NCBI RefSeq assembly: GCF_026571515.1
Contig: NW_026856417.1
Span: 1 to 64,000, forward strand
Source: Ruditapes philippinarum
Lineage: Eukaryota
Length of the DNA: 64,000 nt
Direction: 5' to 3'
Part shown: positions 1 through 23,261 of the stretch, in pieces
Position numbering within the stretch: position 1 is the stretch's first letter
Layout of the letters: every line of letters begins with the position of its first letter
Position numbers and translations under genes: made by a program
The notes under the pieces: model-generated
Seen by the model: only the letters and a program-made list of their open reading frames with translations
Database searches by the model: none
Told to the model about the DNA's origin: nothing

Positions 1-3000
1 ATCTTCATGGACGTGTTCCTTGGGTTAGGGCTTTAAGACTTTTCATGTGCAAAGAAGACCCCCTCAAGTTGTACAAAATCAAATTTGCAACGGAATTGAT
101 CAAATGGTTTTTGAATGGTAGGCTCGTGAATATGATGTTTCTTCCCGAAATTTACATAGAGAAAGAACAAAATCGCCGGTGCAAAAAAAATGACCAAGCC
201 ATGCGGAAATCTCCTGGACATATTACTTGGGTTAGGGCTTTAGGCCTTTTCATGTGCAAAGAAGACCCTCTCTAGTTGTACAAAATCGAATTTGCATTGG
301 AATTGGTCAAATGGCTTTTGAACGGTAAGCTCGTAAAATTGATGTTTTTTTTTTTCCGAAATTTATATACAGAAAAAGCAAATCGCTGGCAAGTGACCTA
401 GCCATGCGGAGATCTCAGATGGACGTGTTCCTTGGGTTAGGGCTTTAAGCCTTATCATGTGCAAAGAAGACCCCCTCAAGTTGTACAAAATCAAATTTGC
501 AACGGAATTGATCAAATGGTTTTTGAATGGTAGGCTCGTGAATATGATGTTTCTTCCCGAAATTTACATACAGAAAGAACAAATCGCCGGTGCAAAAAAA
601 TGACCAGGCCATGCGAAAATCTCCTGGATATATTACTTGAGTTAGGGCTTTAAGCCTTTTCATGTGCAAAGAATACCCTCTCTAGTTGTACAAAATCGAA
701 TTTGCATTGGAATTGGTCAAATGGCTTTTGAACGGTAAGCTCGTAAAATTGATGTTTTTTTTTTTTCAAAATTTATATACAGAAAAAGCAAATCGCTGGC
801 AAGTGACCTAGCCATGCGGAGATCTCATGGACGTGTTCCTTGGGTTAGGGCTTTAAGACTTTTCATGTGCAAAGAAGACCCCCTCAAGTTGTACAAAATC
901 AAATTTGCAACGGAATTGATCAAATGTTTTTTGAATGGTAGGCTCGTGAAAATGATGTTTCTTCCCGAAATTTACATAGAGACAGAACAAATCGCCGGTG
1001 CAAAAAAATGACCAAGCCATGCGGAAATCTCCTGGACATATTACTTAAGTTTGGGCTTTAAGCATTTTCATGTGCAAAGAAGACCCTCTCTAGTTGTACA
1101 AAATCGAATTTGCATTGGAATTGGTCAAATGGCTTTTGAACGGTAAGCTCGTAAAAATGATGTGTTTTTTTCGAAATTGATATACAGAAAAAGCAAATCA
1201 ATGGCCAGTGACCTAGCCATGCGGAGATCTCATGGACGTGTTCCTTGGGTTAGGGCTTTAAGACTTTTCATGTGCAAAGAAGACCCCCTCAAGTTGTACA
1301 AAATCAAATTTGCAACGGAATTGATCAAATGGTTTTTGAATGGTAGGCTCGTGAATATGATGTTTCTTCCCGAAATTTACATAGAGAAAGAACAAATCGC
1401 CGGTGCAAAAAAATGACCAAGCCATGCGGAAATCTCCTGGACATATTACTTGAGTTAGGGCTTTAAGCCTTTTCATGTGCAAAGAAGACCCTCTCTAGTT
1501 GTACAAAATCGAATTTGCATTGGAATTGGTCAAATGGCTTTTGAACGGTAAGCTCGTAAAATTGATGTTTTTTTCCGAAATTTATATACAGAAAAAGCAA
1601 ATCGCTGGCAAGTGACCTAGCCATGCGGAGATCTCATGGACGTGTTCCTTTGGTTAGGGCTTTAAGACTTTTCATGTGCAAAGAAGACCCCCTCAAGTTG
1701 TACAAAATCAAATTTGCAACGGAATTGATCAAATGGTTTTTGAATGGTAGGCTCGTGAATATGATGTTTCTTCCCGAAATTTACATAGAGAAAGAACAAA
1801 TCGCCGGTGCAATAAAATGACCAGGCCATGCGAAAATCTCCTGGATATATTACTTGAGTTAGGGCTTTAAGCCTTTTCATGTGCAAAGAATACCCTCTCT
1901 AGTTGTACAAAATCGAATTTGCATTGGAATTGGTCAAATGGCTTTTGAACGTTAAGCTCGTAAAATTGATGTTTTTTTTCAAAATTGATATACAGAAAAA
2001 ACAAATTGCTGGCAAAAGACCTAGCCATGCGGAGATCTCATGGACGAGTTCCTTGGGTTAGGGTTTTAAGACTTTTCATGTGCAAAGAAGACCCCCTCAA
2101 GTTGTACAATATCAAATTTGCAACGGAATTGATCAAATGGTTTTTGAATGGTAGGCTCGTGAATATGATGTTTCTTCCCGAAATTTACATAGAGAAAGAA
2201 CAAATCGCCGGTGCAAAAAAATGACCAAGCCATGCGGAAATCTCCTGGACATATTACTTGAGTTAGGGCTTTAAGCCTTTTCATGTGCAAAGAAGACCCT
2301 CTCTAGTTGTACAAAAATCGAATTTGCATTGGAATTGGTCAAATGGCTTTTGAACGGTAAGCTCGTAAAATTGATGTTTTTTTCCGAAATTTATATACAG
2401 AAAAAGCAAATCGCTGGCAAGTGACCTAGCCATGCGGAGATCTCATGGACGTGTTCCTTGGGTTAGGGCTTTAAGACTTTTCATGTGCAAATAAGACCCC
2501 CTCAAGTTGTACAAAATCAAATTTGTAACGGAATTGATCAAATGGTTTTTGAATGGTAGGCTCGTGAATATGATGTTTCTTCCCGAAATTTACATAGAGA
2601 AAGAACAAATCGCCGGTGCAAAAAAATGACCAAGCCATGCGGAAATCTCCTGGACATATTACTTGAGTTAGGGCTTTAAGCCTTTTCATGTGCAAAGAAG
2701 ACCCTCTCTAGTTGTACAAAATCGAATTTGCATTGGAATTGGTCAAATGGCTTTTGAACGGTAAGCTCGTAAAATTGATGTTTTTTTCCGAAATTTATAT
2801 ACAGAAAAAGCAAATCGCTGGCAAGTGACCTAGCCATGCGGAGATCTCATGGACGTGTTCCTTGGGTTAGGGCTTTAAGACTTTTCATGTGCAAAGAAGA
2901 CCCCCTCAAGTTGTACAAAATCAAATTTGCAACGGAATTGATCAAATGGTTTTTGAATGGTAGGCTCGTGAATATGATGTTTCTTCCCGAAATTTACATA

Positions 3001-4700
3001 GAGAAAGAACAAATCGCCGGTGCAAAAAATGACCAAGCCATGCGGAAATCTCCTGGACATATTACTTGAGTTAGGGCTTTAGGCCTTTTCATGTGCAAAG
3101 AAGACCCTCTCTAGTTGTACAAAATCGAATTTGCATTGGAATTGGTCAAATGGCTTTTGAACGGTAAGCTCGTAAAATTGATGTTTTTTTCCGAAATTTA
3201 TATACAGAAAAAGCAAATCGCTGGCAAGTGACCTAGCCATGCGGAGATCTCATGGACGTGTTCCTTGGGTTAGGGCTTTAAGACTTTTCATGTGCAAAGA
3301 AGACCCCCTCAAGTTGTACAAAATCAAATTTGCAACGGAATTGATCAAATGGTTTTTGAATGGTAGGCTCGTGAATATGATGTTTCTTCCCGAAATTTAC
3401 ATAGAGAAAGAACAAATCGCCGGTGCAAAAAATGACCAAGCCACGCGGAAATCTCCTGGACATATTACTTGAGTTAGGGCTTTAGGCCTTTTCGTGTGCA
3501 AAGAAGACCCTCTCTAGTTGTACAAAATTGAATTTGCATTGGAATTGGTCAAATGGCTTTTGAACGGTAAGCTCGTAAAATTGATGGTTTTTTTGCAGAA
3601 TTTTTAAACAGAAAAAGCAAATCGCCGGCAAGTGACTTAGCCATGCGGAGATCTCATGGACGTGTTCCTTGGGTTAGAGCTTTAAGACTTTTCATGTGCA
3701 TAGAAGACCCCCTCAAGTTGTACAAAATCAAATTTGCAACGGAATTGATCAAATGATTTTTGATTGGTAGGCTCGTGAATATGATGTTTCTTCCCGAAAT
3801 TTACATAGAGAAAGAACAAATCGCCGGTGCAAAAAATGACCAAGCCATGCGGAAATCTCCTGGACATATTACTTGAGTTAGGGCTTTAAGCCTTTTCATG
3901 TGCAAAGAAGACCCTCTTTAGTTGTATAATTTCGAATTTGCATTGGAATTGTTTTAATGGTTTTTGAACGGTAAGCTCGTAAAATTGATGTTTTTTTCCG
4001 AAATTTATGTACAGAAAAAGCAAATGGCTGGCAAGTGACCTAGCCATGCGAAGATCTCATGGACTTGTTCCTTCGGTTAGGGCTTAAAGCTTTATCATGT
4101 GCAAAGAAGACCCCCTCAAGATGTACAAAATCAAATTTGCAACGGAATTCATCAAATGGTTTTTGAATGGTAGGCTCGTGAATATGATGTTTTTTCCCGA
4201 ACTTCACATAGAGATAAAACAATCCGCCGGTGCAAAAAAAAGACCAAGCCACTCGGAAATCTCCTGGACAAATTACTTGGGTTTGGGCTTTAGGCCTTTT
4301 CGTGTGCTAAGAAGACCCTCTTTATTTGTACAAAATTGAATTTGCATTGGAATTGGTCAAATGGCTTTTGAACGGTAGGCTAGTAAAATTGATGTTTTTT
4401 CTTCTGAAATATATAGACAGAAAAAACAAATCGCTGGCAAGTGACTTAGCCATGCGGAGATCTCATGGACGTGTTTCTTGGGTTAGGGCTTTAAGACTTA
4501 TCATGTGCAAAGAAGACCCCCTCAAGTTGTACAAAATTGAATTTGCAACGGAATTGATCAAATTGTTTTTGAATGGCAGGCTCGTGAATATGATGTTTCT
4601 TCCCGAAATTTACATAGAGACAAAACAAATCGCCGCTGCAACAAATGACTAAGCCACGAGCAAATCTCCTGGACATATTACTTTTGGGATAGGGCTTTAG
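1..4700. repeat. Tandem satellite, ~404-bp period made of two related ~200-bp subunits (A/B dimer), about 11-12 dimers
   Basis: ATCTCATGGACGTGTTCCTTGGGTTAGGGC recurs near 822, 1631, 2440, 2844, 3247, 3651 and 4460. A diverged half (ATCTCCTGGACATATTACTTGAGTTAGGGC) lies midway between. Homopolymer indels shift the frames of the repeated ORFs. Confidence 0.97.
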
Positions 4701-6000
4701 GCCTTATAATATTCAAAGAAGACGCTCCAAAATTGTACATAATCGAAAATGTTCAAATAGTTTTTGAACGGTTTGCTCGATGATTTTTCCTAAAATTTAT
4801 ATAGAGAAAGAACCAATCGCCTGTCAAAAAATGTATCAAGTTACGCGAAAATCTCCTGGACATATTGCTTGGGTTAGAGCTTGATGCCTTATTATGTGCA
4901 AAGAAGACCCTCCAAAGTGTTACAAAAACGAATTTGCAGAATGGTGTTTTAACGGTTTGCTCTAGAATACAGTGGGCTTTTTTACGAAAAATATACACTT
5001 TATTGAAAAATAATCAATTGCCGGTCTAAAAATGACCGTGTCGCGAACATATCCCGGACATATGTTTGGGTTAATGTTTTAGTCCTCATTTTATGCAAAG
5101 AAGTCACTTAAGTTGTACAAAACTGAATATGCAACGGAATCAGACAAATTTCTAACAGTTGGCTCTAAAATATAGTGGGTTTTTTTTTACGAAATATAAT
5201 ACACCATAATAATATATATATAGAGGGAGAACAAATCGACTGTCTTAAAATTGGCCATGCCACGCTGAAATCTCCCGGACATAATGTTTGAATAAGGGCT
5301 TTGGTGTTCATTTTGGACAAAGAAAACCCTCAAAAATTGTACAGATACAAATTTGCAACGTAATCAAACAAATGATGTATAAACAGTTCGCTTTAGAATA
5401 TGGTGCTTTTTACGAAATTTCTCAGACTTCATATACTTTAGAACTAAACGCCGGTTCAAAAAGCGATTATTTATGGGGCCTCTTTCTTTTATTTTTCTTG
5501 CGTTATCTAGGTTTTTTAAAATATTTATTGCTGTGAAGAAGATCCTCTTTATCACCACAATCTTCGTGATCATTCCACTTTTTCTCTTAATACGTAGCGA
5601 TCATTTTTACTATGGCTAACTGTACATGACGTTAATTCCTGTGAGAACGTGCTCTAAATTGCGTCTCTTTGTCACACACCACTAAATAACATTTCTATAG
5701 AGCTGTGATTGGTCAAAATAATGTAAAACACATCTTAAGGAGGGTTTTATCTCCGTAATGACACTTTGTAAGTTTTCAATTTATCTACGGTTATATCGAA
5801 AACAGCAATTCGCCGGTCGAAAAACGACCAAGCCATGCGGATTTCCACGAATCCATTTTGATGTTAGAGCTTTAATCGTCATATTGTGCAAGAAGATGAA
5901 TTTACAACGGAATCACGCACATGCTGTTTTAACGGTTGGCTCTAGAATATTGTGTGTTTTACAAAAAAATATTCACTTTATAAATAGAAAATGTCAGTAC
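4701..6000. repeat. Degenerate edge copies of the same ~200-bp satellite monomer
   Basis: Motifs GCAAAGAAGACC, ATCGCCGG, ATCTCC(T/C)GGACAT and AACGGAAT persist with rising divergence. Confidence 0.85.
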
Positions 6001-7004: not shown

Positions 7005-10000
7005 ATATAATATAATGAAATATATTTTCGAAAATCGGGAGGTATTGGTTTCCTAGTTAAAAACTCAGTTACTGAGTATGTTGAAATTAAGAAGTCTGAA
7101 CGCGAATATGTTTTTTGGCTAAAAATTTGTAAATCTGTGTTTACTGATTTAGACAAAGATTTTTTTATTGGTGTTATATATATATATCCCTCCCCAACAG
7201 TCGCGGTTGACAATAATGACGAATTTTTCAAATTCGAAAACAAGGCTTCTACTTCATGTAGTAACAACAAATATTGTATTATTCTGGGCGATGCAAATGC
7301 ACACACTGCCTATTTACCTGATTAAGTGATTTTTGATGAATTTCTTCAAACACTTTTTGATTTAAGTGAGGATTTTATAGGCGAATTAAGCACTACAGAG
7401 GTCCTAGAATAATGATATTCCATTGAATAGGACATCTAAAGATACAAAAACAAATGCTAAAGGGTTTAAATTCTATTCTATTCTATTCTAATGAAGTTAC
7501 ATTTTTATTTTAAATGGGCGTATAGGCAATGATTATAGAGTTGGAGAATTTACTTTTAGAGATACTTCTACCATAGACTACGTAGCGTCAACAATTAACT
7601 GTTTTAAAATTTTGCAAATTTTGAAATAGTAAACACTGATCCCCTGTTCTCTGACGGCCATGCCCTCCTTTCAGTCACTGTTAATTGTTCTTTTAATTTC
7701 CAAACAATATTCCCAAACCGCATGTAAATATTAACCATATGGCGACGTCGAAACCACCAAAATTGCAGAATAGGTTGACAAATAAATTCGTAGAAAACTT
7801 GTGTCGAAAAAATAAACGAAGTTTTAGTTATGGTAAAAAATATATCACCTCATTCCTTCTAAACGCGAAAAAAATTTGGTCTCAGATCATATTGCGGAAC
7901 TTTATGATTCGGCTACATCGACATTTCCTAAAAATTACTCATCTTTTCAATAAAAAAGATAAATCTAAAGCGTGTTTCGGGCCTCTTTGAGCTTAATAAA
8001 GGCAACGATACAACTCGGCGAGAAAGAAATGTATTTTGCGTAAGTCTGACCTATATAGACACGAATAAAATAGGGCGAGTAAAGTTTTAAAACAAACGAT
8101 GAATATCTTAAAGCGGCACGCCTCCAGATTCATGCTAATTTTCATGAAAATTTTGAAAATGTCTTTAAAAGTATTATTCAGTGAAATAACCAAAAGGAAG
8201 CAATTTACACAATATCAATGGCACTTACAACCCACGTAAATTACTAAAAAGAGGACAAAATATTCAAAAATAGCCCTTTCTGCGTTAGTAACGCAGTAGA
8301 AATATAGTTATAAATACTGAAAAATCGGTCATTGACCGCACATAACATGTAAATTATTCCTAGAACTTTGAATCTTTACACTTTTCCTAAAATCTTAGTA
8401 CATTTTTCTCAGGTTTGATTTTATTGAAATATTTTTCTCATCTGGAGGCGTGCAGCTTTAATACAAAAGCACAGATATAAAAATGAACGAAAACTCCGCT
8501 ATGTTGAAAATTTTGAATAGTCTTAATACTGAATCTAAACGTAATAAAATACCAGATTTCTGAATATTACGAATATTATAAAAATACTAATGCTGATACT
8601 GAATATGATGACAACTTTAATTTTGAATGTGACATTAGTTCACAAGAAAACAATAATGTCTATAATGGTAAAACCTCTTCTGCAGAAATAAGTAAAGCGT
8701 TTCGGAAATGTAATAACTCAAAAGTTACATCACCGCAAGACTATATACACATGTATAACAAATATTTAAAGAGTACTGAACATATAATGAAATCAATTTA
8801 CTGCGACTTCTTTAACAAAATATTTGATTCGGGTATTCTAGCTGATATCTGGTTAATAGGAACTATAACCCCAATTTTTAAACAGAAAAGGTCCCCACTC
8901 GCAGTGGAAATATAAAGACCAATAACAATATTAAGCGGTTTACAAAACGATGTTTACTGCGATTCTAAATGAAATAAGTTTCTTTTATTCAATAACTCAT
9001 TAAACAAAAAAAGCAGGTTTTGGATTAACTATTCAACGTCAGACCAAGTTTTTATGTTAAAACTTCTTATAGATAAGTTAAGAGCTAAAAAGAAAAAACT
9101 ATTTGTTCGTTCATTGATTTTTCTGCATCCTTCGACAAAATTTGGATAGTGGGTTTATGGAGCAAGTTACTACAAACCGGTATAAATGGGAAACTATTCC
9201 AGGTCATTTTTAACATGAATGCAGATATAAAGTCCTGTGTCACATTAAATTATAATATTTTTCCGTTTTTTAAACGCCAGTGTGGAGTCAGGCAAGGTGA
9301 AAATATGTCTCTGATCCTGTTTTATATTTATCTTAACGATCTAGAATCTTATCTTGCTATAAACAACAACGGAATCATAATTTAACGCCCAAATACTGAC
9401 ATAGGCCTATATTTAAAATTGTTTAACTTGTTCTATGCAGACGACACATTTCAAACCTTATTGAACGATTTTCATAAATATTGTCAAACTTGGAAATTGA
9501 AAATAAACATGAATAAAACAAAAATAATAATATTTGGAACGAACAAACCGAAAACTTATTACTTAATGGAGAACCAGTTGAAATTGTTAAAGAATATAAA
9601 TACCTATGAGTTTTATTTTCACCTTCAGGAAGCTTTCTCAGTGCTAGAAAATTAATTTCGAGTCAAGCAAACAAAGCAATGCAGCTATTAAATGCAAACA
9701 TATTTTACCTTGATCTTCCTTTAGATATTCAATTTAAATTGTTTGATCAGACTATACTACCAATACTAATTGCGAGGTCTGGGGTTTTGAGAATATTGAG
9801 ATTATTGAAAAAGTACATTACGACTTTCTTAGATAAAATACGAAAGTAATAAAAGTACACCCCTCTATATGCTTTACGGAAAATTAGGCAGATCTCCCCT
9901 AGAAATTATAATTTAATCAAGAATTATTAAATTCTGGAGCAACTTAATTTCCGGAAATCAAAATAAAATACATAAAATATGTTACGGCAATATGTTGAAT

Positions 10001-14290: not shown

Positions 14291-14956
14291 TTTTATAATT
14301 TAGGCAGTTTTATATTGTAACATAAACATTTTTCTTTTGGTCAATTACAATTATAAAAGCCAATCTTTTGAAAAATATTACTGAAACAATTTGACAAGCT
14401 TAAAAGTGAGCATACTATCACTTTCATCGTGTAACTATGATGACTCTTTGGTGGAAATAAGAATACGTAGCTAGCTTTAAAACCCATCCTGTCCACGCAG
14501 CGAGCCATTACTTGATTATTTAAGTAGATTTATCTAAATTAATGATTTCCTAAAAAGGAACTTTTTTTGCACCTCACACCTATAAATGAACTTATAGTGA
14601 ATACATTGAATAAACAATTAGAATACCATTGATAATGTCAGAGTGTACTTTTCGTACAGAGAAATTCGGTCAGTTTTATCATACATTACTTTGGATACAT
14701 AGACACCAAATATTTTGGTAACAATAGCACATCGTTCCAAAATTAGCAAGATTCTTTGGTTGTCGGATGAACATGCATTATTTAAGACAAAAAAAAGAAA
14801 TGCAGATCTAGACATAGTATGTCTTGATAAGGACCTTTGAATACGTGAAACACGATACACACGCGATACGACATTCAACTCGTCACTGTGTTACATTCTT
14901 TACAATACATGACTGAAGAAACAGGCTGAAGGGTTAAGGTGGACAAATTCAGAAGA

Positions 14957-17900
14957 ATGATTTATTTCAAAGTTATTCTACGACTTTGTTTCGCTTTGTT
15001 TCATTTAGTGGGAAATGTGCATATGTATTCAATTGTGAAACGTCAAGGTAAGATTTTTTTACTTTTTAATAAAAGAACATAATTAGAAAATCAAATAAAA
15101 AAGGAATATAATTTTATAATAAAACATAATAAATCAATAATAAATTAATATATTAGCTTGATTAAGATACTTCTAACTCTACTTGTATATTTTTTTTTTG
15201 GAATTTGTAACCCCATACCCTGATATCACAAGGGGAAGCGTGGTCATAAACCGATTAGAGCTTTAACCAACTTTATCCTGGTAAAGCGGTATACATCTTA
15301 ACGTTAGGCATCCACCCACACACACACCCACTGACTATACAGTGATTTATTGTCGAATAGGAACACAAACAACAAAATATATATATGGAAGCTTTATGCA
15401 ACTTTATTCTATTTGTCATTGAATATATTTAAGGTAAATTAACGCTAAATTATGTGTCTATTAATATGTAAATGTTTTTCCTCCGCTACATGAACATTTT
15501 GCATAAAACATGTGTATCGGAATGTTATCTGCGTGAATGATAAGACAAATTGCGTATGTGTGTATATTGTAATATAATAACAAAGAGGACGAGTATCATG
15601 TGCACTTATTATACGGAAATGTCAGCACAAATTAACCATTATATCTAATTATGCATGCAATATTTTAATGAAAAACTTTTTTTTTAATTTTTTTTTAAGT
15701 GCCGAATTTTCAGTGGTATCAAGCCGGTCATGTGACATCCCACAAGATAACCGAGGCGTCTGGACTTGCTGCAAGTCGTAAACATCCGGGAGCTATTTAT
15801 ACTCACAATGATCATGGGGGCGCTGCTGAAATCTACGTCATTAATGCTTTAACTGGAGAAAAAGAGGCTACACTTACAATAAGTGGCGTCACGTCAAATG
15901 ATTGGGAGGATATAGCTCTCGGGAAATGTCACCCTGATCCGAACAGTGGCTTTTGTATCTATATAGGTGCATAAGTTTTGTCTTTTTTTTCTTTTCTTTT
16001 AATTTGATTTGCTTTAATTGGTTGCTTGTAATTGACAGATGTCTATTTTCACTAGCCGAATGCATTCAAACCCCGTCAGGGGCAAGTTGTTGTTTCTTTG
16101 AGCAAGAAACTTTACACTCATTGCGCAGTACTGGTTGGTACCAGTGTAACGTTTTGGCATTTTTTTATAATTAACTAGTTTTGAATAAAGATTATCGTTT
16201 GCTGAAATGATTTTAGTGTAACTTTACAATTATGTTAATTGTTTATATTGCGACAATATATTTTAGTTTACGGTACTTTACAATATACGTTTAGTATACG
16301 TATTTTCAATGAACGTTTGATATCATATAATGTAATTAACGTCTCAGTGATCATGATCATTCTTATCAGCCAATGAAAATAAAGTCATGCTTGAGCGATT
16401 ATCTCAGCAGGTATAAATACGGCGATTAGAAAAAAATTACTCAGTCTGCAGAGGAATTCACCGGGACCAGGTTACTTTATGTAATTGAAGCCTCGCTTCA
16501 TACATAGAGGATAAGTTCGTCTACCTAACTGAAGCCTAGCTTCATAGGTAGAAAAGAAGAATTGGCAAAACTTAATACCCTTGTCTATCCAATTGAAGTC
16601 TAGCTTCATGGATATAGTGTCGTTCTAGTTTAGTTGTGAAATTGTATTTGACTCTGGGTACTTATAGATTTCCATATTTTCTGAAAGCCTCGCTATCAGG
16701 AAATTGGTAACATATAGGTATTAAAAATCCAGAGGTATACCAATAACGAATAAGTTTGTATAGATAAAACAGTTGGAACTTTGTAACAGTTGTAATTCCC
16801 CGCCAGCAGCTTATCTTTCTATCTAAATAGAAGCCTCGCTTCATAGATAGGGAGGTAGTTGCTGGACTATAGGAAATTATCGGGTTGCAGCGTGATATCT
16901 ATAGCTTTTGAATTATTTCATAGTGTTATATTGTAAACATATTTACTGTATTGTGACTTTTAATAATTTAATAGTGTATTTTGGAGTATTAATTCAAGCT
17001 GATTGTTTATGATATATGATAATTTCATAATCATTTGTATCTAATCAAACGGCAGGTAGCCCAAAGAAAAATTTATTATATATTCGTTGTACATCCGCTC
17101 GGTACACGTTACACCAGGAAAGGATTGGAGAGTGTGTCTATAACCTTATAGCTCCCATACAATCGAAGTAAACAAAATTTGTATAGACCAAACAATAAGT
17201 GTACAGTTTCATTCTTACGGATATAACGACTTGCACTTAACGGGGTTTGAACCAAAGGAGCCAGCAATCCGTAGATTATTAACCCGACTCATTAACTATA
17301 CCGATACCTGTATATAGCTTTTTTAACTAATTGCTTTACACACTTAAAACACAACATATTGTAAAATAATTGTAAAAAAAAAACGCGTATGTTTATGATC
17401 TCAAATGTTATATTATAAGAACTGAGCATTGCTTAGCATTGTATAGCTATTAAGTGTTTATTTTTTACGTTCCAGGCGACTTTGGTAACAGTGGCAAGGG
17501 AGCTCTGAATAATATTTACAGAGTTACTGAACCTGATGATCTAAGCAGTCAAACAATACATGTTGGTTCAAACGATAAATTAGAGTTCTCGTAAGCATCA
17601 CGTCTAAAATTTACACGTCTAAAGTAAACATTATATCCGTACTAATACTTTGCTGTATAATGTGTATTATAATAAATCACAACATATCAGTTCATATACA
17701 AAATCTTTACTCTTGACTCTACAGATTTTATTCATTACAGATGGAACTTTGATGATTGTGAGACGTTGATGGTGGACCCAAGTGCCAATCTGTTCATAAT
17801 TTCCAAAGTTTCAAACGGTCACGGTACTATTGCTCAGCTGCCAAATTCTGCTTGGGGTTCGAGCTCGAGAGTTTCTTTAAGCTCCACGGCGGTAGTTAAC

Positions 17901-19193
17901 ATTGAATCAGGCTCGAATGATCCTGTTGGTGGTGATATTTCTCCGAATGGGAATGAGGTTCTTGTAAAGGTATTTACTCCGTTATTAACCTTTTTTATAA
18001 AGGTTTCCACTACGTTATTACTCTTTTTATAGAGGTATTAACTCCATTATTGACCTTTTATAAAATTATTCACTCAATTATTGCCCTTTTGTTAAAATGT
18101 TTACTCCGACATTTCCTTTTTATAAAGGCATTTACTACCTTTCAAAAATTCATTTACTCCGTTATTTTTATGAAGGTATTTTCTCCGTTACTTCTTTTTA
18201 TTTATAAAGGTATTTAATCCATCATTTCTTTTTTATATAGGTGTTTTCTCCGTCATTTCTCTTTACATAAGTATTTACTCCTTCATTTCGTTTAATATAA
18301 ATATTTACTCCGTTATGTCTTTTTTATGAAGGTATTTACTCCGTTATTTCTCTTTTTATAAATCATTTACTCTGTTACAACGCTTTTATAATAGCGTATT
18401 TTCGTTATTACCATTTACTCCTTAACTCTCCTTCTTTCAAGGTATTAACTCTGATATTATCCTTTCATAATTTTATATACTCGGTTATTTCCCCTTTGTT
18501 AAAGGTATCCACTCTTATATCGACGGTATCCTTAAGTTTTGTAAAGTTATTTACTTGGTTTTTCATAACATCTTTAAGTCCGATTACCTTATTGATTTTT
18601 TTGCGACATGGCAACAAAGCATGACTTAAATTAAGTATTCGTCTAGAAGATTGGTGTCCATTACATAGCATTATCTTATCTAGTTATATAGTCGTGGCCG
18701 ACAAGACCTTTCGAGAAATATGTAATTTTCGTTAAAATTCACAGCTGGTCCAAGGACTGGCATATGAATGTATTTTTTTAATTCAAATATCCTAAAATGC
18801 TCTAAGAAACTATGAAATAATCCCTTTTCCCACAGAAAACAATGTGTGTACGTTTCTATAATAAAACATCACATTCTCCTTATATTCCATTAACTCGTGA
18901 ACTTTTTCAGCCAATCGCTGGCTATTTAGCAAGGAAGTAACACCTTATCTATAAAATTATTTTATTATTGCAGCTATAATACTATATCGTCTCTGTTTCA
19001 GACCCATCACAATATCTATTATTGGAATTTACACGGTTCAAATGACTATTTAGCCACGCTACAGACACCTGGGACAAAATTAGCATATAAAGATGAGCCC
19101 CAAGGGGAGGCCGTTTGTTGGGACGCAACTGGGCTCGGATACTACACTCTCAGTGAGGGACAAGATCAAATTCTTTATCACTACGTCAAATGA
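14957..19193 (+). CDS. 5-exon secreted protein (297 aa) resembling uncharacterised bacterial-type beta-propeller proteins
   Basis: Exons 14957-15047, 15700-15966, 17476-17590, 17741-17969 and 19002-19193; all introns GT-AG; 894 nt open. Signal-like N-terminus MIYFKVILRLCFALFHLVGNVHM. Motifs ITEASGLAASRKHPGAIYTHND, DWEDIA, YIGDFGN, IYRVTEP, DCETLMVDP, GGDISPNG, EPQGEAVCW and GYYTLSEG. Confidence 0.9.
16060..16160 (+). mobile_element. Degenerate SINE fragment (CORE-like) in intron 2
   Basis: TTTCTTTGAGCAAGAAACTTTACACTCATTGCGCAGTACTGGTTGGTACCAG. It shares the CAGT(A/G)CTGGTTGGT.CCAG segment with the SINE at 60546-60682. Confidence 0.55.
17966..18510. repeat. ~31-33-bp intronic minisatellite whose unit begins with the exon-4 splice donor (AAAG|GTATTTACTCCGTTATT)
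   Basis: Degenerate copies near 17966, 17999, 18031, 18172, 18206, 18328 and 18501. Confidence 0.85.
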
Positions 19194-19245
19194 TACTACA
19201 CTCTTAGTGAGGGACAAGATCAAATTCTTTATCACTACGTCAAAT
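19138..19245 (+). repeat. 54-bp tandem duplication spanning the stop codon
   Basis: 19138-19191 is repeated at 19192-19245 with a single C>T difference. Confidence 0.95.
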
Positions 19246-20397
19246 GATAATCCTTGTGAAAATATAACATGTATTTATTTTTGACATTAAAATGTTAACA
19301 TTTACTAATTTAGAATTTTTGTGCCACCTTTTTGAATATGTTGTCCCTCCTCCAAGTACATAACTTTGAATCGCAACATGAACATCCATATTTTTAACGT
19401 TCTCAGAAGTCTAGTTTTGGAAAGGTTTAAGGATGCCTGAAAATGATATATAATAGAAGTATAAGGAAAGGTATAGTATAGATGGATATTAAACGCGTGA
19501 TCTGAAATGACGTCATCTTCATTAATACACAATTTCAACATACAGAATTCACAAATTCAGTATTTCAGCTCCATAAATTCACGATTTCAACTTATTTAAA
19601 CTTCATGAAATCACGAGTTCAACTTCAATCATGAATTCACGATTTCAACTTAATGCCATCTGGTATCACACAAAACTACACAGAAGCAATTATTAATACA
19701 CTTGGAATATAACCAACTAAACTAGTTATTACTTCAAATATTTAAAGAATTATTTTCTAGAATATAACCAGTCGTTTCATATAATTGTCAAATCAAAAGA
19801 ATTAAAGTGAAATAATTAAGAATTGTGTCGTCGATAAAATACGATTACAATAAGAAAACCCTTCGAAACCTCTACATGTCCTCTCTCTATATGTAAATTA
19901 AAATAAAGCCGATCTTCTATCTTTAAGAAACGAACGTCTCTGCGCGCTATAAATAATTCTCGAGGCGCTGTCTTGGAGAAGACTTAAAAGTGATATGATG
20001 CACTTTTCCTTGGTAATATTACTGAGATAATTAGTTTGTAACATCACATAATTGTTTTGTTTTGTTTTTTTCAACAAAAATGAGCTAAAGACAGCTTTAA
20101 TTATACAGAAACATTAACGCCTACTTTAATATCGAGCAAATCTAAAAATCATGATTTATTCAAATATCATTATATATACGCTTCTCTGATTATTGTGAGA
20201 TCCATGAACCGAGAATTGTTCTTACAATATCTGTTGGTGATGAATTAATTAAAACTAATTAGTTTTATTGTATTTGTATGATTTGCAAGGGTGCAGCGGT
20301 CGATTGATCTTTGAAAAACTATGAAAACAACATATCCATTTGCATAGGAGCGTCACTTGAACTAAATGGAGATAATGAAATAATTCTTATTACAGCA

Positions 20398-23261
20398 ATG
20401 GGATTATACAAATACAAATATTTTGCTGCTTTATATGTTTTGATAGTTACTATTGCATGTTATATTACAAGAAGCAACGGATCAAAATTTAAGTATAACA
20501 TTTCAAGTTGGAAATTTTGTTTAAAATCCGACCATATTTTGTCGACGCTGACACAAGTAACGCTATCGCAGTGTGTTGATGAATGTGCCACACGAACAGA
20601 CTGTCAGGCGGTTAACTATTTCAAGAGTTACCACATCTGTGAACTTATTCCGGAAAACAATGGTGTGTTGTTTGAAACTACAAAGGTCAATCGTGGATGC
20701 GTTTTGGTAAAAAAGGATGATATGATCACAACCGAGGTAATGTTTTTTAGATAAAAACGATTGTAGAATTTAAATACATATTTCTTTTGAGAAAATCAAC
20801 CCAAGATTATAAAAAAGATCATTGAAGTAACAAAATTATAATGACGTCTAGGATTTTCATTATTATATTAAAGATGCATCGGTATAAATGCAAATGTGAA
20901 TGTTTAAAGTGTGTTTTAAATCGAATGTTTGTTCATTTAATAGTGATTTGCAAAAGGTAAATATGACATTAAGACAATACAGTTTTTTATCTGAATAAAA
21001 CTAAAGTAGAAACAGAAAAAAACAACAACACGATGACCAACAACAACATCAACAACATCATGCAATTACTGTTGGAATGAATACTGCTACCACTATTACT
21101 AATACTGCCGCGGCTGCTACATCTACTACTACTACTTCTACTACTACTGTTAGTGCTGCTACTGCTTGTGCTGCTACTGCTACTTTTATTACTAATGCTA
21201 CTACAACTACTGCTTTTACTACTGCTATAAAGGCTGCTACTACTACAGCTACTGCTGTTTCTGTTGTTGTTGTTGCTACTTCTGCTCATACTACTAATGC
21301 TACTGATGCCTCTGTTGTTGTTGCTGCTACTTTTGCTGCTATTACGATTGCTTTTGCTACTATGTCTGCTACTACTTCTGCTTCTTCTACTACTACTGCT
21401 TTTACTACTGTTGTTGCTGTTGTTGCTACTACTGCTGCTAATGCTTATACTGTTACTGCTGCTAATGCGTCTGCTTCTACTACTGCTGCTGCTACTAATA
21501 CTACTTCTTTTGCTACTTCTTTTGCTACAACTACTGCTGCTTTGACTATTACATGTAATGCCGCGGGTTTATATCTTTAACTTAAGTCTGAAACAGTCAA
21601 ACACTTGCTCGATAACCAATACTGATTGATGAATTTCCTTACAATTAGATTAATGAAAGCTGTCCTTGTGGCGCGAGGGAGTCATGTGACCTTGAATTAG
21701 ATGTGTCTTGCACGATTAAAGGTAAATATTATGTCTCCAGTGATAATAAATACAATATGAACTATTCAATTTAGAATTGCTCTCAACAGATAATGATCAA
21801 ATTCTTTACACTGTAAATGAACAGGTATTTGGAAAAAAGCTTTCCCGCAATTATCTGTATTAAATAATTAAATAACAATATAATCATTCAGATCACACGT
21901 TAATATATTTTTTAAAATAATGTGTTCATATGAATAGGCTTCATTAACAAAGCTTTCCTTTTTCATAGAATGCGAAACTTTAACGATACAAAATGGTCGA
22001 GTAAATGGAAATATGCGGTCAATAGGATCTTCAATAACATACGAATGCAACCAAATGTACATTGCAACATTTCAAGAATCAGGAGCGACCTGCCTTGCAA
22101 ATGGGACATGGTCATACACTCCCGATTGTACAAAAGGTTTTCCTTTTTGCTATATATAGGAACATTTTATGTTTTACTGAGTGGAATGGAAAAGAAAAAT
22201 AAGTTAGCAAACAAAAAATCTCCTGGTAAAAGTTTGGCTGAAATGAAATTGAGATCAAAAGTAAAACAACTTTTCTTGAGTAAGGTTTTTGTACCGTTCC
22301 TTTCAGTGTATGTCTTTCTTTTTCTTTAAACCTATTAGAATAATAAAAGAAATGCATCAATATTAATAAGCATGACATTGTATATGTTATTGAATACGCC
22401 AATGGTTTGTTCGATATTACGGTCGCCACCATAATAGTACATGTTGTTTCACTATTTTAGTCAAAGAAAACCAGAAGAGAAATTTTCGAACTCTTTTTTG
22501 TCTCAATTTATTGCACATCATATACAAGTATATTACACATTGATATTGCACACATTCCTAGTGTATATTGGTCAATAAACCACTATATTTTAGATACTGA
22601 AGGTAATAACATTTGCAAGGGTTGTATACGTCCGAGAGATTGTCAAGATGTTAAAGCAGTTAACAAAACAGCAGAAACAGGGTTGTTTAAGATTTATCCA
22701 ATTGGAAGCAATGGGTTTATGGTTCGCTGTGATATGGACACGCAACCTGGCGGCTGGACGGTGTTTCAACGCAGAGAATCAAATAGTGATTTTGAAAAAG
22801 ACTGGGAAGCATATAAGGAAGGGTTTGGGCAGTTGGCTAATAATTTCTGGTTAGGGAACGATAAGATATGGAAACTTACAAGCAGAGGGCTGTACAAACT
22901 ACGAGTTGATCTCATAGACCAAAATGGCTCGGAGGGATATGCGGAATACAGTTCTTTTTCAATCGGAAATGAGTCGACGAAATATGTCTTGAATATCGCT
23001 GGCCAAAGTGGAACAGCCGATGACAGCTTGATCGTGGGTCATAACGGAATGATGTTCAGCACTATTGACCGAGACAACGATACATATTTTAGATCTTGTG
23101 TATATCTTTTTAAGGGAGGGTGGTGGTACTCTGACTGTCAGGTTTCAAACTTAAACGGACCATATGGGAACGTCCGTTGTAATCGCGGAATGACGTGGAA
23201 ACAATGGAGAGGTAATTGCGTGTTTATGAAATTTACTGAAATGAAAATTCGTCGAAAGTAA
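20398..23261 (+). CDS. FReD paralogue A: signal peptide-PAN/apple-4Cys-CCP/sushi-fibrinogen C domain protein (415 aa)
   Basis: Exons 20398-20736, 21649-21721, 21969-22136 and 22594-23261 (1248 nt, GT-AG). PAN motif QCVDECATRTDCQAVNY...CEL. CCP motif C...NG...G..ITYEC...TCLANGTWS..PDC. Fibrinogen motifs CDMDT..GGWTVFQRR, W..YKEGFG, FWLGN, GGWWY..C..SNLNG and EMKIR. Confidence 0.95.
21020..21545. repeat. Degenerate trinucleotide microsatellite (ACT/GCT/GTT)n in intron 1 of paralogue A
   Basis: Low-complexity NCT repeats that generate the spurious poly-Thr/Ala, poly-Leu and poly-Ser ORFs. Confidence 0.95.

What the first reader, a model, noticed from the sequence alone, without database searches (positions are those of the whole stretch)
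14957..19193. Intron-containing secreted gene that looks bacterial: candidate horizontally acquired beta-propeller enzyme beside an immune cluster
Seen: a clean 5-exon, 297-aa ORF with a signal-like N-terminus, not evident as one gene from the ORF track. From recall, not a search: the motif series E.SGLA.S...PG..THND.G / DWEDIA / YIGD.GN / D.E.L.VDP / GGDISP.G / EPQGEAV / Y.LSEG matches a widespread uncharacterised secreted bacterial family with a predicted beta-propeller fold, and I do not recognise it from vertebrates or insects. The acidic residues at these motif positions suggest a metal-binding, phytase/esterase-like centre. Inference: an ancient bacterium-to-mollusc transfer with intron gain, lying 1.2 kb upstream of a putative pattern-recognition cluster on the same strand.
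Basis: partly seen in the sequence, partly recalled or inferred. Interest (0 to 1): 0.8.

Follow-up and report, generated by a model that had tools for sequence, protein, structure and literature searches.

The report
Bacterial-type secreted propeller gene in clam
This is a real, spliced and transcribed clam gene for a secreted five-bladed propeller protein of an uncharacterised family that is common in bacteria but, among animals seen here, only in molluscs and a brachiopod, so it is a plausible but unproven ancient gene transfer.

Summary
The 5-exon, 297-aa model is correct. Its five exon translations and three split codons match RefSeq XP_060591579.1 (uncharacterized LOC132746447, Ruditapes philippinarum) exactly. 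All four GT..AG introns are skipped in contigs of two sequencing runs, one recorded as RNA-Seq.

The protein has no Pfam or NCBIfam model. AlphaFold gives a confident all-beta propeller (pLDDT 93.8), which I read as five-bladed.

The family is very large in bacteria: 8,591 50%-identity clusters across many phyla, often with a T9SS sorting tail. Named eukaryote hits were only molluscs (bivalves, Haliotis, a chiton), the brachiopod Lingula and Symbiodiniaceae.

Animal sequences form one clan (100/99). Its branching order follows the species tree, so any acquisition predates the molluscs. Nesting inside bacteria, a donor, and a separate origin from the dinoflagellate copies (AU p = 0.10) are not shown. 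Horizontal transfer is therefore the most economical reading, not a demonstrated one.

This genome holds seven loci with partly different intron positions. The fibrinogen-gene neighbourhood recurs only at a segmental duplicate, so an immune link is unsupported. The metal-dependent enzyme function is inferred only.

The parts
14890..14956 (+). 5' untranslated part of the transcript (minimum extent)
   Evidence: An RNA-Seq contig of run X13 (record 6) covers 14890-15044 and continues across intron 1.
14957..15047 (+). Exon 1 coding part: start codon, hydrophobic signal-like N-terminus and a short stretch ending in K-R-Q. It ends in phase 1.
   Evidence: Its translation equals residues 1-30 of P0324. 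It is modelled as a helix at residues 2-23. A (K/R)-R-Q motif stands at the same place in the nearest relatives P0209, P0208 and P0015.
15048..15699 (+). Intron 1 (652 nt, GT..AG)
   Evidence: Splice sites were read. A joint skipping 652 nt is seen in X1 and X13.
15700..15966 (+). Exon 2: blade 1 and the start of blade 2. It carries E49, S51-G52, H66-N67-D68 and D98-W-E100-D101.
   Evidence: Its translation equals residues 32-119 of P0324. The conserved columns are in alignment A4.
15967..17475 (+). Intron 2 (1509 nt, GT..AG). It holds a dispersed repeat at about 16032-16185.
   Evidence: A joint skipping 1509 nt is seen in X1 and X13. Depth over 16032-16185 is about 1,590 in X1 and 570 in X13, with many loose ends.
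17476..17590 (+). Exon 3: the rest of blade 2, with Y-I-G-D-x-G-N completed across the junction and Y134...E138-P139.
17591..17740 (+). Intron 3 (150 nt, GT..AG). This is the only intron position shared by all seven loci of this genome.
   Evidence: Paralogue exon map.
17741..17969 (+). Exon 4: blade 3 and the start of blade 4, with C-E165-T-L, K180 and G-G-D223-I-S-P-N-G228.
17970..19001 (+). Intron 4 (1032 nt, GT..AG). It starts inside a 31-nt minisatellite (17965-18391) whose unit repeats the donor-site sequence.
19002..19193 (+). Exon 5 coding part: the rest of blade 4 and blade 5, with E-P-Q-G269-E270-A-V and Y-T-L-S285-E286-G. The TGA stop is at 19191-19193.
19138..19249 (+). 54-nt tandem duplication (2.1 copies, 98% identical) of the last 53 coding bases, the stop and one base beyond. 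The protein is unchanged because the first copy keeps the stop.
   Evidence: The transcript contig of X13 departs from the window right after 19194 and resumes like the sequence after the second copy, so that transcript lacks the duplication (table 7).
19285..19290 (+). First AATAAA/ATTAAA hexamer after the stop, a candidate poly(A) signal
   Evidence: Script scan only. No read ends were seen there.

Best explanation
This is an ordinary, expressed nuclear gene of the Manila clam (RefSeq LOC132746447). It encodes a secreted single-domain protein of about 30 kDa that folds as a five-bladed beta-propeller.

The domain belongs to an uncharacterised family with no Pfam or NCBIfam model. The family is very large in bacteria across many phyla, where it often carries a type IX secretion sorting tail. 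Among named eukaryotes seen here, it occurs only in molluscs, the brachiopod Lingula and Symbiodiniaceae dinoflagellates.

The most economical history (inferred) is a single capture of a bacterial gene by a lophotrochozoan ancestor before the mollusc-brachiopod split. After that came vertical descent, duplication into a small family (seven loci in this genome), an exon carrying a eukaryotic signal peptide, and intron gains and losses that differ between paralogues.

The clam protein keeps every family-invariant residue. In each of the five blades a conserved acidic or polar residue lies at the start of the strand I take to be innermost: E49/S51, E100/D101, E165, D223 and E270. H66-N67-D68, E138, K180 and E286 are also conserved. 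From what is known of propeller enzymes with a single central metal site, I infer one central, probably calcium- or metal-binding, catalytic pocket. That would make it an extracellular hydrolase, possibly acting on a glycan or a phosphoester. Substrate and role are unknown.

Its position 1.1 kb upstream of a PAN/fibrinogen-related gene is most likely incidental.
For: Gene, splicing and expression:
- establish the model, the identical RefSeq protein and the four spliced joints.
- Seven loci lie on five contigs of the 1.4-Gb genome.
- CDS GC is 42% and GC3 is 36%, similar to the neighbouring fibrinogen exon. The introns are AT-rich.

Fold:
- AlphaFold2 gives pLDDT 93.8 and pTM 0.88 for P0324, and 92.6 for the Mactra relative. 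Both are all-beta with 21-22 strands, which I read as 5 blades of 4.
- An A2 profile search of PDB sequences hits only designed or WD40-type propellers.
- Foldseek finds only propellers.

Family size and range:
- 8,591 cluster representatives at E <= 1e-3 and 3,655 at E <= 1e-10.
- 578 of 600 pattern matches in GTDB species genomes were confirmed. They include Bacteroidota, Ignavibacteriota, Calditrichota, Planctomycetota, Myxococcota, Armatimonadota and Rhodothermota.
- Full-length identity between animal and bacterial proteins is 30-47%.

Eukaryote range:
-.

Tree:
- The animal clan has support 100/99 on a stem of 0.6.
- Branching is Lingula, then chiton, then the conchiferans (95/86).

Conserved residues and function hints:
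- T9SS, PKD and FlgD-Ig tails occur in bacteria.
- WSC and Sushi fusions occur in Haliotis.
Against: - The tree is unrooted, and the animal clan is simply one side of the longest inner branch. It joins the bacteria at a node with support 52/77 and 41/36, so neither nesting nor a donor is shown.
- Holding animals and dinoflagellates together costs 19.5 lnL units but is not rejected (p-AU 0.10).
- Absence from other animals rests on the named fraction of capped hit lists. Two unnamed transcripts (P0034, P0333) at the base of the animal clan are of unknown origin.
- No solved structure or characterised relative supports catalysis. Foldseek TM is at most 0.55 to any PDB entry (best: papaya glutaminyl cyclase 2iwa).
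- Bacterial gene neighbourhoods are heterogeneous and give no functional hint.
- I could not inspect model coordinates, so blade count, innermost-strand assignment and the central ring of acidic residues are inferred from strand positions, not measured.
Confidence: 0.6

Rival explanations
1. The family is an ancient eukaryotic or metazoan gene inherited vertically. It was lost in almost all lineages and survives in lophotrochozoans and dinoflagellates. The bacterial and eukaryotic versions diverged at the root.
For: - The animal clan is one side of the longest inner branch, so the root may lie on that branch.
- The order inside the clan follows the species tree.
- A single clan of animals plus dinoflagellates is not rejected (p-AU 0.10).
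Against: - This needs very many independent losses. No named hit came from any other animal phylum, fungi, plants or other protists.
- Animal proteins are 35-47% identical to bacterial ones over the full length.
- In the free trees the dinoflagellates sit beside P0305 within a group that includes Myxococcota, away from the animals.
- Intron positions differ even among paralogues of one genome.
Confidence: 0.22
2. The protein is not an enzyme. It is a secreted binding protein, such as a lectin-like pattern-recognition molecule, that works with the neighbouring PAN/fibrinogen-related genes in immunity.
For: - It is secreted and has a propeller fold, as some invertebrate lectins do.
- It lies 1.1 kb upstream of, and on the same strand as, a PAN exon (20311-20754) and a Fibrinogen_C exon (22683-23261).
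- Haliotis relatives are fused to carbohydrate-binding WSC or Sushi domains.
- UniRef labels two Mya relatives 'Fucose-specific lectin'. This is an automatic name and was not tested.
Against: - The blades are not equivalent. Conservation points to one central site, not to five repeated sugar sites.
- Fibrinogen or PAN neighbours occur only at the C11096 segmental duplicate (flanks 83-92% identical). None lie in about 10 kb of flank on each side of the other five paralogues (the 8.6-9.3 kb gap between tandem copies).
- Co-expression was not tested.
Confidence: 0.2
3. The stretch is bacterial contamination or an assembly artefact, not an animal gene.
For: The only support is its strong similarity to bacterial proteins.
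Against: - It has four spliceosomal GT..AG introns that are removed in sequenced transcripts.
- Animal repeats and animal genes lie on both sides in the same contig.
- Seven intron-bearing loci lie on five contigs.
- An identical RefSeq gene model exists, and orthologues occur in many chromosome-scale mollusc assemblies.
Confidence: 0.01

Closest known systems
Unnamed bacterial secreted propeller family (hypothetical proteins; often annotated only as 'T9SS type A sorting domain-containing protein')
   Same: They align over the full length at 30-47% identity. The motif series is the same: E-x-SGL, HND-x-G, DWEDIA, Y-x-GD-x-GD, Y-R-x-x-EP, (D/N)-x-E-x-L, GGD-I-S-x-DG, EPQGEA and Y-T-x-SEG. The domain size is the same, about 260 aa.
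   Different: The clam gene has introns and a eukaryotic signal exon, and it lacks the T9SS, PKD or FlgD-Ig tail. Like its nearest mollusc relatives, it has a Cys pair around the blade-2 loop (G-x-C...C-I-Y-I), where most Bacteroidota-type members have G-P-G-P.
Pfam PF13449 'Phytase-like' (esterase-like activity of phytase) and PF06977 'SdiA-regulated' (YjiK-type) propellers
   Same: They are secreted or periplasmic bacterial propeller domains with an SGL-type first-blade motif and conserved Asp/Glu. They are the nearest Pfam-bearing clusters in the ESM Atlas (scores 0.87-0.91, leads only). PF13449 gives sub-threshold hits in 6 of 60 relatives.
   Different: The clam protein and its whole-length relatives score nothing. 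No relative reaches the 27.6-bit cut-off. hhalign of the family profile against one true PF13449 member gave probability 0.8%. Neither family has a well-established activity, so even membership would not fix the function.
Five-bladed propeller enzymes with a central metal or acid site (plant-type glutaminyl cyclase 2iwa; from general knowledge also the Ca-dependent apyrase/CANT1 type and GH43/GH32-type hydrolases)
   Same: By my reading of the strand pattern, the blade number and the placement of conserved acidic residues at the start of each blade's first strand are the same. 2iwa is the best PDB match by TM-score (0.55/0.62).
   Different: Sequence identity to 2iwa is 9% and no sequence-level relationship was found. 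TM 0.55 shows a shared architecture only. The apyrase and GH comparisons are from memory and were not tested here.
Known bacterium- or phage-to-bivalve gene transfers, e.g. phage-type lysozymes co-opted by bivalves (PMC5303276)
   Same: These are secreted hydrolase-type genes of prokaryotic type, integrated in the host genome, intron-bearing and expressed, with a patchy animal distribution.
   Different: Here the range spans three mollusc classes plus a brachiopod, so the event would be much older. No donor clade is resolved and the activity is unknown.

Membership tests
Pfam PF13449 Phytase-like | Whole-protein hmmscan score at or above the gathering cut-off (27.6 bits) | tested here: not met
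   There was no hit for the exons or for whole P0324. The best score among relatives was 22.4 bits, and 6 of 60 members matched at E <= 1 (best E 2.8e-5), none at the cut-off. hhalign against one member gave probability 0.8%.
Pfam PF06977 SdiA-regulated | hmmscan score at or above the gathering cut-off | tested here: not met
   One of 60 relatives hit at E = 0.15. The ESM Atlas feature scores of 0.87-0.89 are leads only.
Beta-propeller fold | Four-stranded antiparallel sheets arranged radially, predicted with high confidence | tested here: met
   AlphaFold2 gives pLDDT 93.8 and pTM 0.88, all-beta with 21 strands. All Foldseek hits are propellers. Profile hits go to designed WD40-type propellers at E = 4e-12. 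The blade number of five was counted from the strand list, not from coordinates.
WD40 / PD40 repeat families | Pfam repeat models above cut-off; seven or more similar blades | tested here: not met
   No WD40 model hit. PD40 hit in 3 of 60 relatives at E >= 0.094. TM to seven-bladed WD40 structures is only 0.37-0.47.
Horizontally acquired animal gene of bacterial origin | Physically integrated in the host genome (host flanks, spliceosomal introns) and transcribed | tested here: met
Horizontally acquired animal gene of bacterial origin | Patchy distribution in the recipient domain against a broad distribution in the donor domain | tested here: met
   Named eukaryote hits were only Mollusca, Lingula and Symbiodiniaceae. 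Bacterial hits number in the thousands across many phyla. Limits: the hit lists are capped and only part of the hits carry names.
Horizontally acquired animal gene of bacterial origin | Recipient clade nested within donor sequences with strong support | tested here: inconclusive
   The animal clan has support 100/99, but it attaches at an unresolved deep node and the tree is unrooted. An animal-plus-dinoflagellate clan is not rejected (p-AU 0.10).
Horizontally acquired animal gene of bacterial origin | Identifiable donor lineage | tested here: not met
   The nearest bacterial branches have weak support: a Bacillota MAG at 52/77 and 73.
Type IX secretion cargo (bacterial relatives) | C-terminal Por_Secre_tail (PF18962 / TIGR04183) | tested here: not met
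   The tail is present in many bacterial relatives and absent from the clam protein, which ends with the propeller.

The most novel reading that the evidence does not exclude
A bacterial secreted propeller enzyme was captured once by the stem lineage of molluscs and brachiopods more than half a billion years ago. It was retained and expanded in these shell-forming, filter-feeding animals as a new extracellular metallo-hydrolase family. Its role would lie in handling microbial or matrix glycans or phosphoesters. Symbiodiniaceae would have acquired the same family independently.
Probability: 0.3. Interest if true: 0.65.

Novelty: new member of a known kind. Interest (0 to 1): 0.45.

Why it matters
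If the transfer reading holds, this would be one of the older bacterium-to-animal gene captures. It would be shared by two phyla and still be expanding in bivalves. It would also give a handle on a family with thousands of bacterial members that has no Pfam or NCBIfam model and no known function. The clam, oyster and abalone copies are easy to express and could define that function. As it stands, the gene is an annotated 'uncharacterized protein' whose origin is suggestive rather than proven, and whose supposed tie to the immune cluster does not hold.

Tried and rejected
- **Family scans.** Pfam and NCBIfam found nothing, exon by exon or on the whole database protein.
- **Word search with exon 2.** It found only four exon-sized fragments because of the length filter.
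- **Profile comparison.** hhalign against a single PF13449 member was negative. A proper family profile was not available.
- **Bacterial gene neighbourhoods.** Across 144 flanking ORFs of the family-bearing bacterial loci there was no recurrent partner. The top family, DDAH (13 of 144), probably reflects synteny among related genomes (not checked).
- **Literature.** Searches by topic and by accession found no paper on this family or on its transfer.
- **Earlier scan notes.** None cover this gene.
- **Misleading first tree.** The first FastTree placed five divergent Haliotis domains among bacteria. With a site-heterogeneous model they return to the mollusc clan, so that was a long-branch effect.
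- **Contamination.** Rejected; see the rival explanations.
- I never joined the exons into a protein myself. Whole-protein analyses used P0324, an identical database protein returned by a tool.
Full report
**1. Observation**

Reading 14700-19500 and translating the candidate exons gives five exons on the + strand:
- 14957-15047
- 15700-15966
- 17476-17590
- 17741-17969
- 19002-19193

They total 894 nt, which is 297 codons plus TGA. The four introns (652, 1509, 150 and 1032 nt) all begin with GT and end with AG.

A cluster look-up then returned P0324, which is RefSeq XP_060591579.1, 'uncharacterized protein LOC132746447 [Ruditapes philippinarum]', 297 aa. The five exon translations lie in it exactly at residues 1, 32, 121, 159 and 235. 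The three split codons (GTG, GGC, TCA) give its V31, G120 and S158. It is also already annotated as one gene, and the window is from that clam or something nearly identical.

Laying public runs on 14800-19400 shows joints that skip exactly 652, 1509, 150 and 1032 nt, with GT..AG ends, in contigs of two runs from different studies. X13 is RNA-Seq on record; X1 is only guessed to be RNA. Depth in those two runs lies on the exons. A 974-nt Logan contig encodes P0210, 95-100% identical to exons 2-5 read contiguously. Expression in two raw-read RNA runs was low.

**2. The gene in its genome**

Six-frame searches of the 1.4-Gb assembly with exons 2, 4 and 5 find seven loci on five contigs:
- the window (C4904)
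- C11096, 95-99% identical in protein, with an in-frame TAA in exon 2
- two tandem copies on C11993
- two copies on C507
- one copy on C9173

The flanks of the C11096 copy are collinear with the window at 83-92% DNA identity, so it is a segmental duplicate or a very divergent haplotype.

An approximate exon map shows the following:
- Only intron 3, between blades 2 and 3, is at the same place in all seven loci.
- Intron 2 is present in the window, C11096 and C9173 only.
- Intron 1 is missing in the second C11993 copy.
- Four copies carry an extra intron inside the exon-2 region.
- The C507 copies lack intron 4 and have two other introns.

Coding GC (42%, GC3 36%) is like that of the neighbouring fibrinogen exon, and the introns are 27-33% GC. 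Contamination is excluded.

**3. Family**

Pfam and NCBIfam give nothing for the exons, for the whole protein or for most relatives. Only 6 of 60 relatives give sub-threshold hits to PF13449 Phytase-like. hhalign of the family profile against one true PF13449 member was negative, with probability 0.8%.

A profile of exon-2 pieces (A1) searched against 1.84 billion representatives found 8,591 proteins at E <= 1e-3 and 3,655 at E <= 1e-10. The best loci come from Cytophagales and other Bacteroidota, Ignavibacteriota, Calditrichota, Planctomycetota, Myxococcota, Armatimonadota and Rhodothermota. Named protein hits add Actinomadura, KSB1 and Krumholzibacteriota.

Many bacterial members carry a T9SS sorting tail, PKD or FlgD-Ig domains. 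Their gene neighbours are heterogeneous.

**4. Eukaryote range**

Named eukaryote hits fall into three groups:
- Bivalves: Mactra, Mercenaria, Mya, Dreissena, Sinanodonta, Potamilus, Mytilus, Tegillarca, Pinctada, oysters and scallops.
- Other lophotrochozoans: the gastropod Haliotis, the chiton Liolophura and the brachiopod Lingula anatina.
- Dinoflagellates: two-domain proteins of Symbiodiniaceae.

The ESM Atlas agrees: the only eukaryotic neighbour cluster is molluscan. No vertebrate, arthropod, cnidarian, fungal or plant hit was named. That absence rests on capped lists in which only part of the hits carry names.

**5. Phylogeny**

A first FastTree of 380 domains scattered five very divergent Haliotis domains among bacteria. 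With LG+C20 they rejoin the molluscs.

The finished careful tree (79 rows) has these features:
- One animal clan (30 named molluscs, Lingula and 8 unnamed transcripts) with UFBoot 100 and SH-aLRT 99 on a stem of about 0.6.
- Inside it, two unnamed transcripts branch first, then Lingula, then the chiton, then the other molluscs (95/86). This order follows the species tree.
- The clan joins the bacteria at a node with support 52/77 and 41/36. No donor is resolved, and because the tree is unrooted, nesting within bacteria is not shown.

The dinoflagellates sit elsewhere, beside P0305 within a group that includes Myxococcota. Forcing them together with the animals costs 19.5 log-likelihood units but is not rejected (p-AU 0.10).

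The case for transfer therefore rests on distribution and on the 30-47% full-length identity to bacterial proteins, not on topology. If it was a transfer, it happened once and before the mollusc-brachiopod split. It was not a transfer into molluscs.

**6. Fold and likely mechanism**

AlphaFold2 with 60-sequence alignments gives pLDDT 92.6 for the Mactra relative and 93.8 (pTM 0.88) for the clam protein itself. The model has an N-terminal helix (the signal) followed by 21-22 strands. I read these as five four-stranded blades closed by the first strand.

Foldseek finds only propellers. Seven-bladed WD40 proteins match at TM 0.37-0.47. The best TM is to the five-bladed papaya glutaminyl cyclase (0.55/0.62, 9% identity). 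No characterised close structure exists.

Alignment A4 shows:
- invariant: S51, G52, E100, E138
- nearly invariant: E49, S56, H66, N67, D68, G70, D98, D101, E165, K180, D223, G228, G269, E270, S285, E286

All are kept in the clam protein. One conserved acidic or polar residue sits at the start of the first strand of each blade, which I take to be innermost. In propeller enzymes this is where a single central metal or acid site is built. That comparison is general knowledge and was not measured here, because I had no model coordinates.

Two further hints point the same way: secretion in both bacteria and animals, and WSC or Sushi fusions in Haliotis. Together they make an extracellular metal-dependent hydrolase the most likely function, at roughly 40%. 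A non-catalytic binding protein is the main alternative.

**7. Neighbourhood**

A PAN exon (20311-20754) and a Fibrinogen_C exon (22683-23261) follow on the same strand. Among the paralogues, only the C11096 duplicate has such neighbours. None lie in about 10 kb of flank on each side of the other five (the 8.6-9.3 kb gap between tandem copies). The adjacency is most simply a by-product of one segmental duplication in a genome rich in fibrinogen-related genes.

**8. Novelty**

The locus is annotated but unnamed. It is a new candidate of a known kind: a bacterial-type secreted gene domesticated by an animal lineage.

Noticed in passing
G000:C11096:84001-87394 (loci L002, L010, L017): A second copy of the whole gene, 95-99% identical in protein, carries an in-frame TAA in exon 2 (at the codon matching K85). 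Its exon 2-to-exon 4 span is about 830 nt shorter than the window's. Its flanks are collinear with the window at 83-92% identity and include a PAN and a fibrinogen exon. It may be a pseudogenised segmental duplicate or a divergent null haplotype.
   Followed up: partly
window 19138-19249: A 54-nt tandem duplication covers the end of the coding sequence and the stop. The transcript contig of run X13 lacks it, so it is polymorphic or specific to this assembly.
   Followed up: partly
window 17965-18391: A 31-nt minisatellite begins at the exon 4 donor. Each unit repeats the donor-like sequence AAAG|GTATTTACTCC, giving a row of potential alternative donors. The RNA contigs use only the first.
   Followed up: partly
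window 16032-16185 (inside intron 2): A short stretch has very high depth in all four runs (about 1,590 in X1 and 570 in X13), with many loose ends and variants. It behaves like a transcribed dispersed repeat (SINE-like) rather than part of this gene.
   Followed up: no
window 14957-15047 and relatives P0209, P0208, P0015, P0025: Exon 1 ends in a conserved (K/R)-R-Q just before the propeller starts. This could be a dibasic propeptide cleavage site after the signal peptide.
   Followed up: no
window 1-5000: Near-identical ORFs recur every 404 nt or so on both strands (for example 445-669, 1258-1482, 1662-1886, 2066-2290, 2471-2695), which indicates a satellite-like tandem array.
   Followed up: no
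window 9149-9655: Two adjacent ORFs look like fragments of a reverse transcriptase (non-LTR retrotransposon remnant). I judged this by eye only.
   Followed up: no
window 20987-21580: Long low-complexity ORFs (Ser-, Thr/Ala- and Leu-rich in three frames) lie between the PAN exon and the fibrinogen exon. This indicates a trinucleotide-type simple repeat.
   Followed up: no
proteins P0013, P0162, P0163 (Symbiodinium microadriaticum, Effrenium voratum): Symbiodiniaceae encode proteins with two tandem copies of the same propeller domain. In the free trees they sit beside P0305 within a bacterial group that includes Myxococcota, away from the animals, though a common eukaryote clan is not rejected.
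   Followed up: partly
proteins P0155, P0033, P0005, P0039, P0093 (Haliotis): In abalone the domain occurs in tandem pairs and fused to a WSC domain or a Sushi repeat. Some second domains are extremely divergent (end branches 1.65-1.97).
   Followed up: partly
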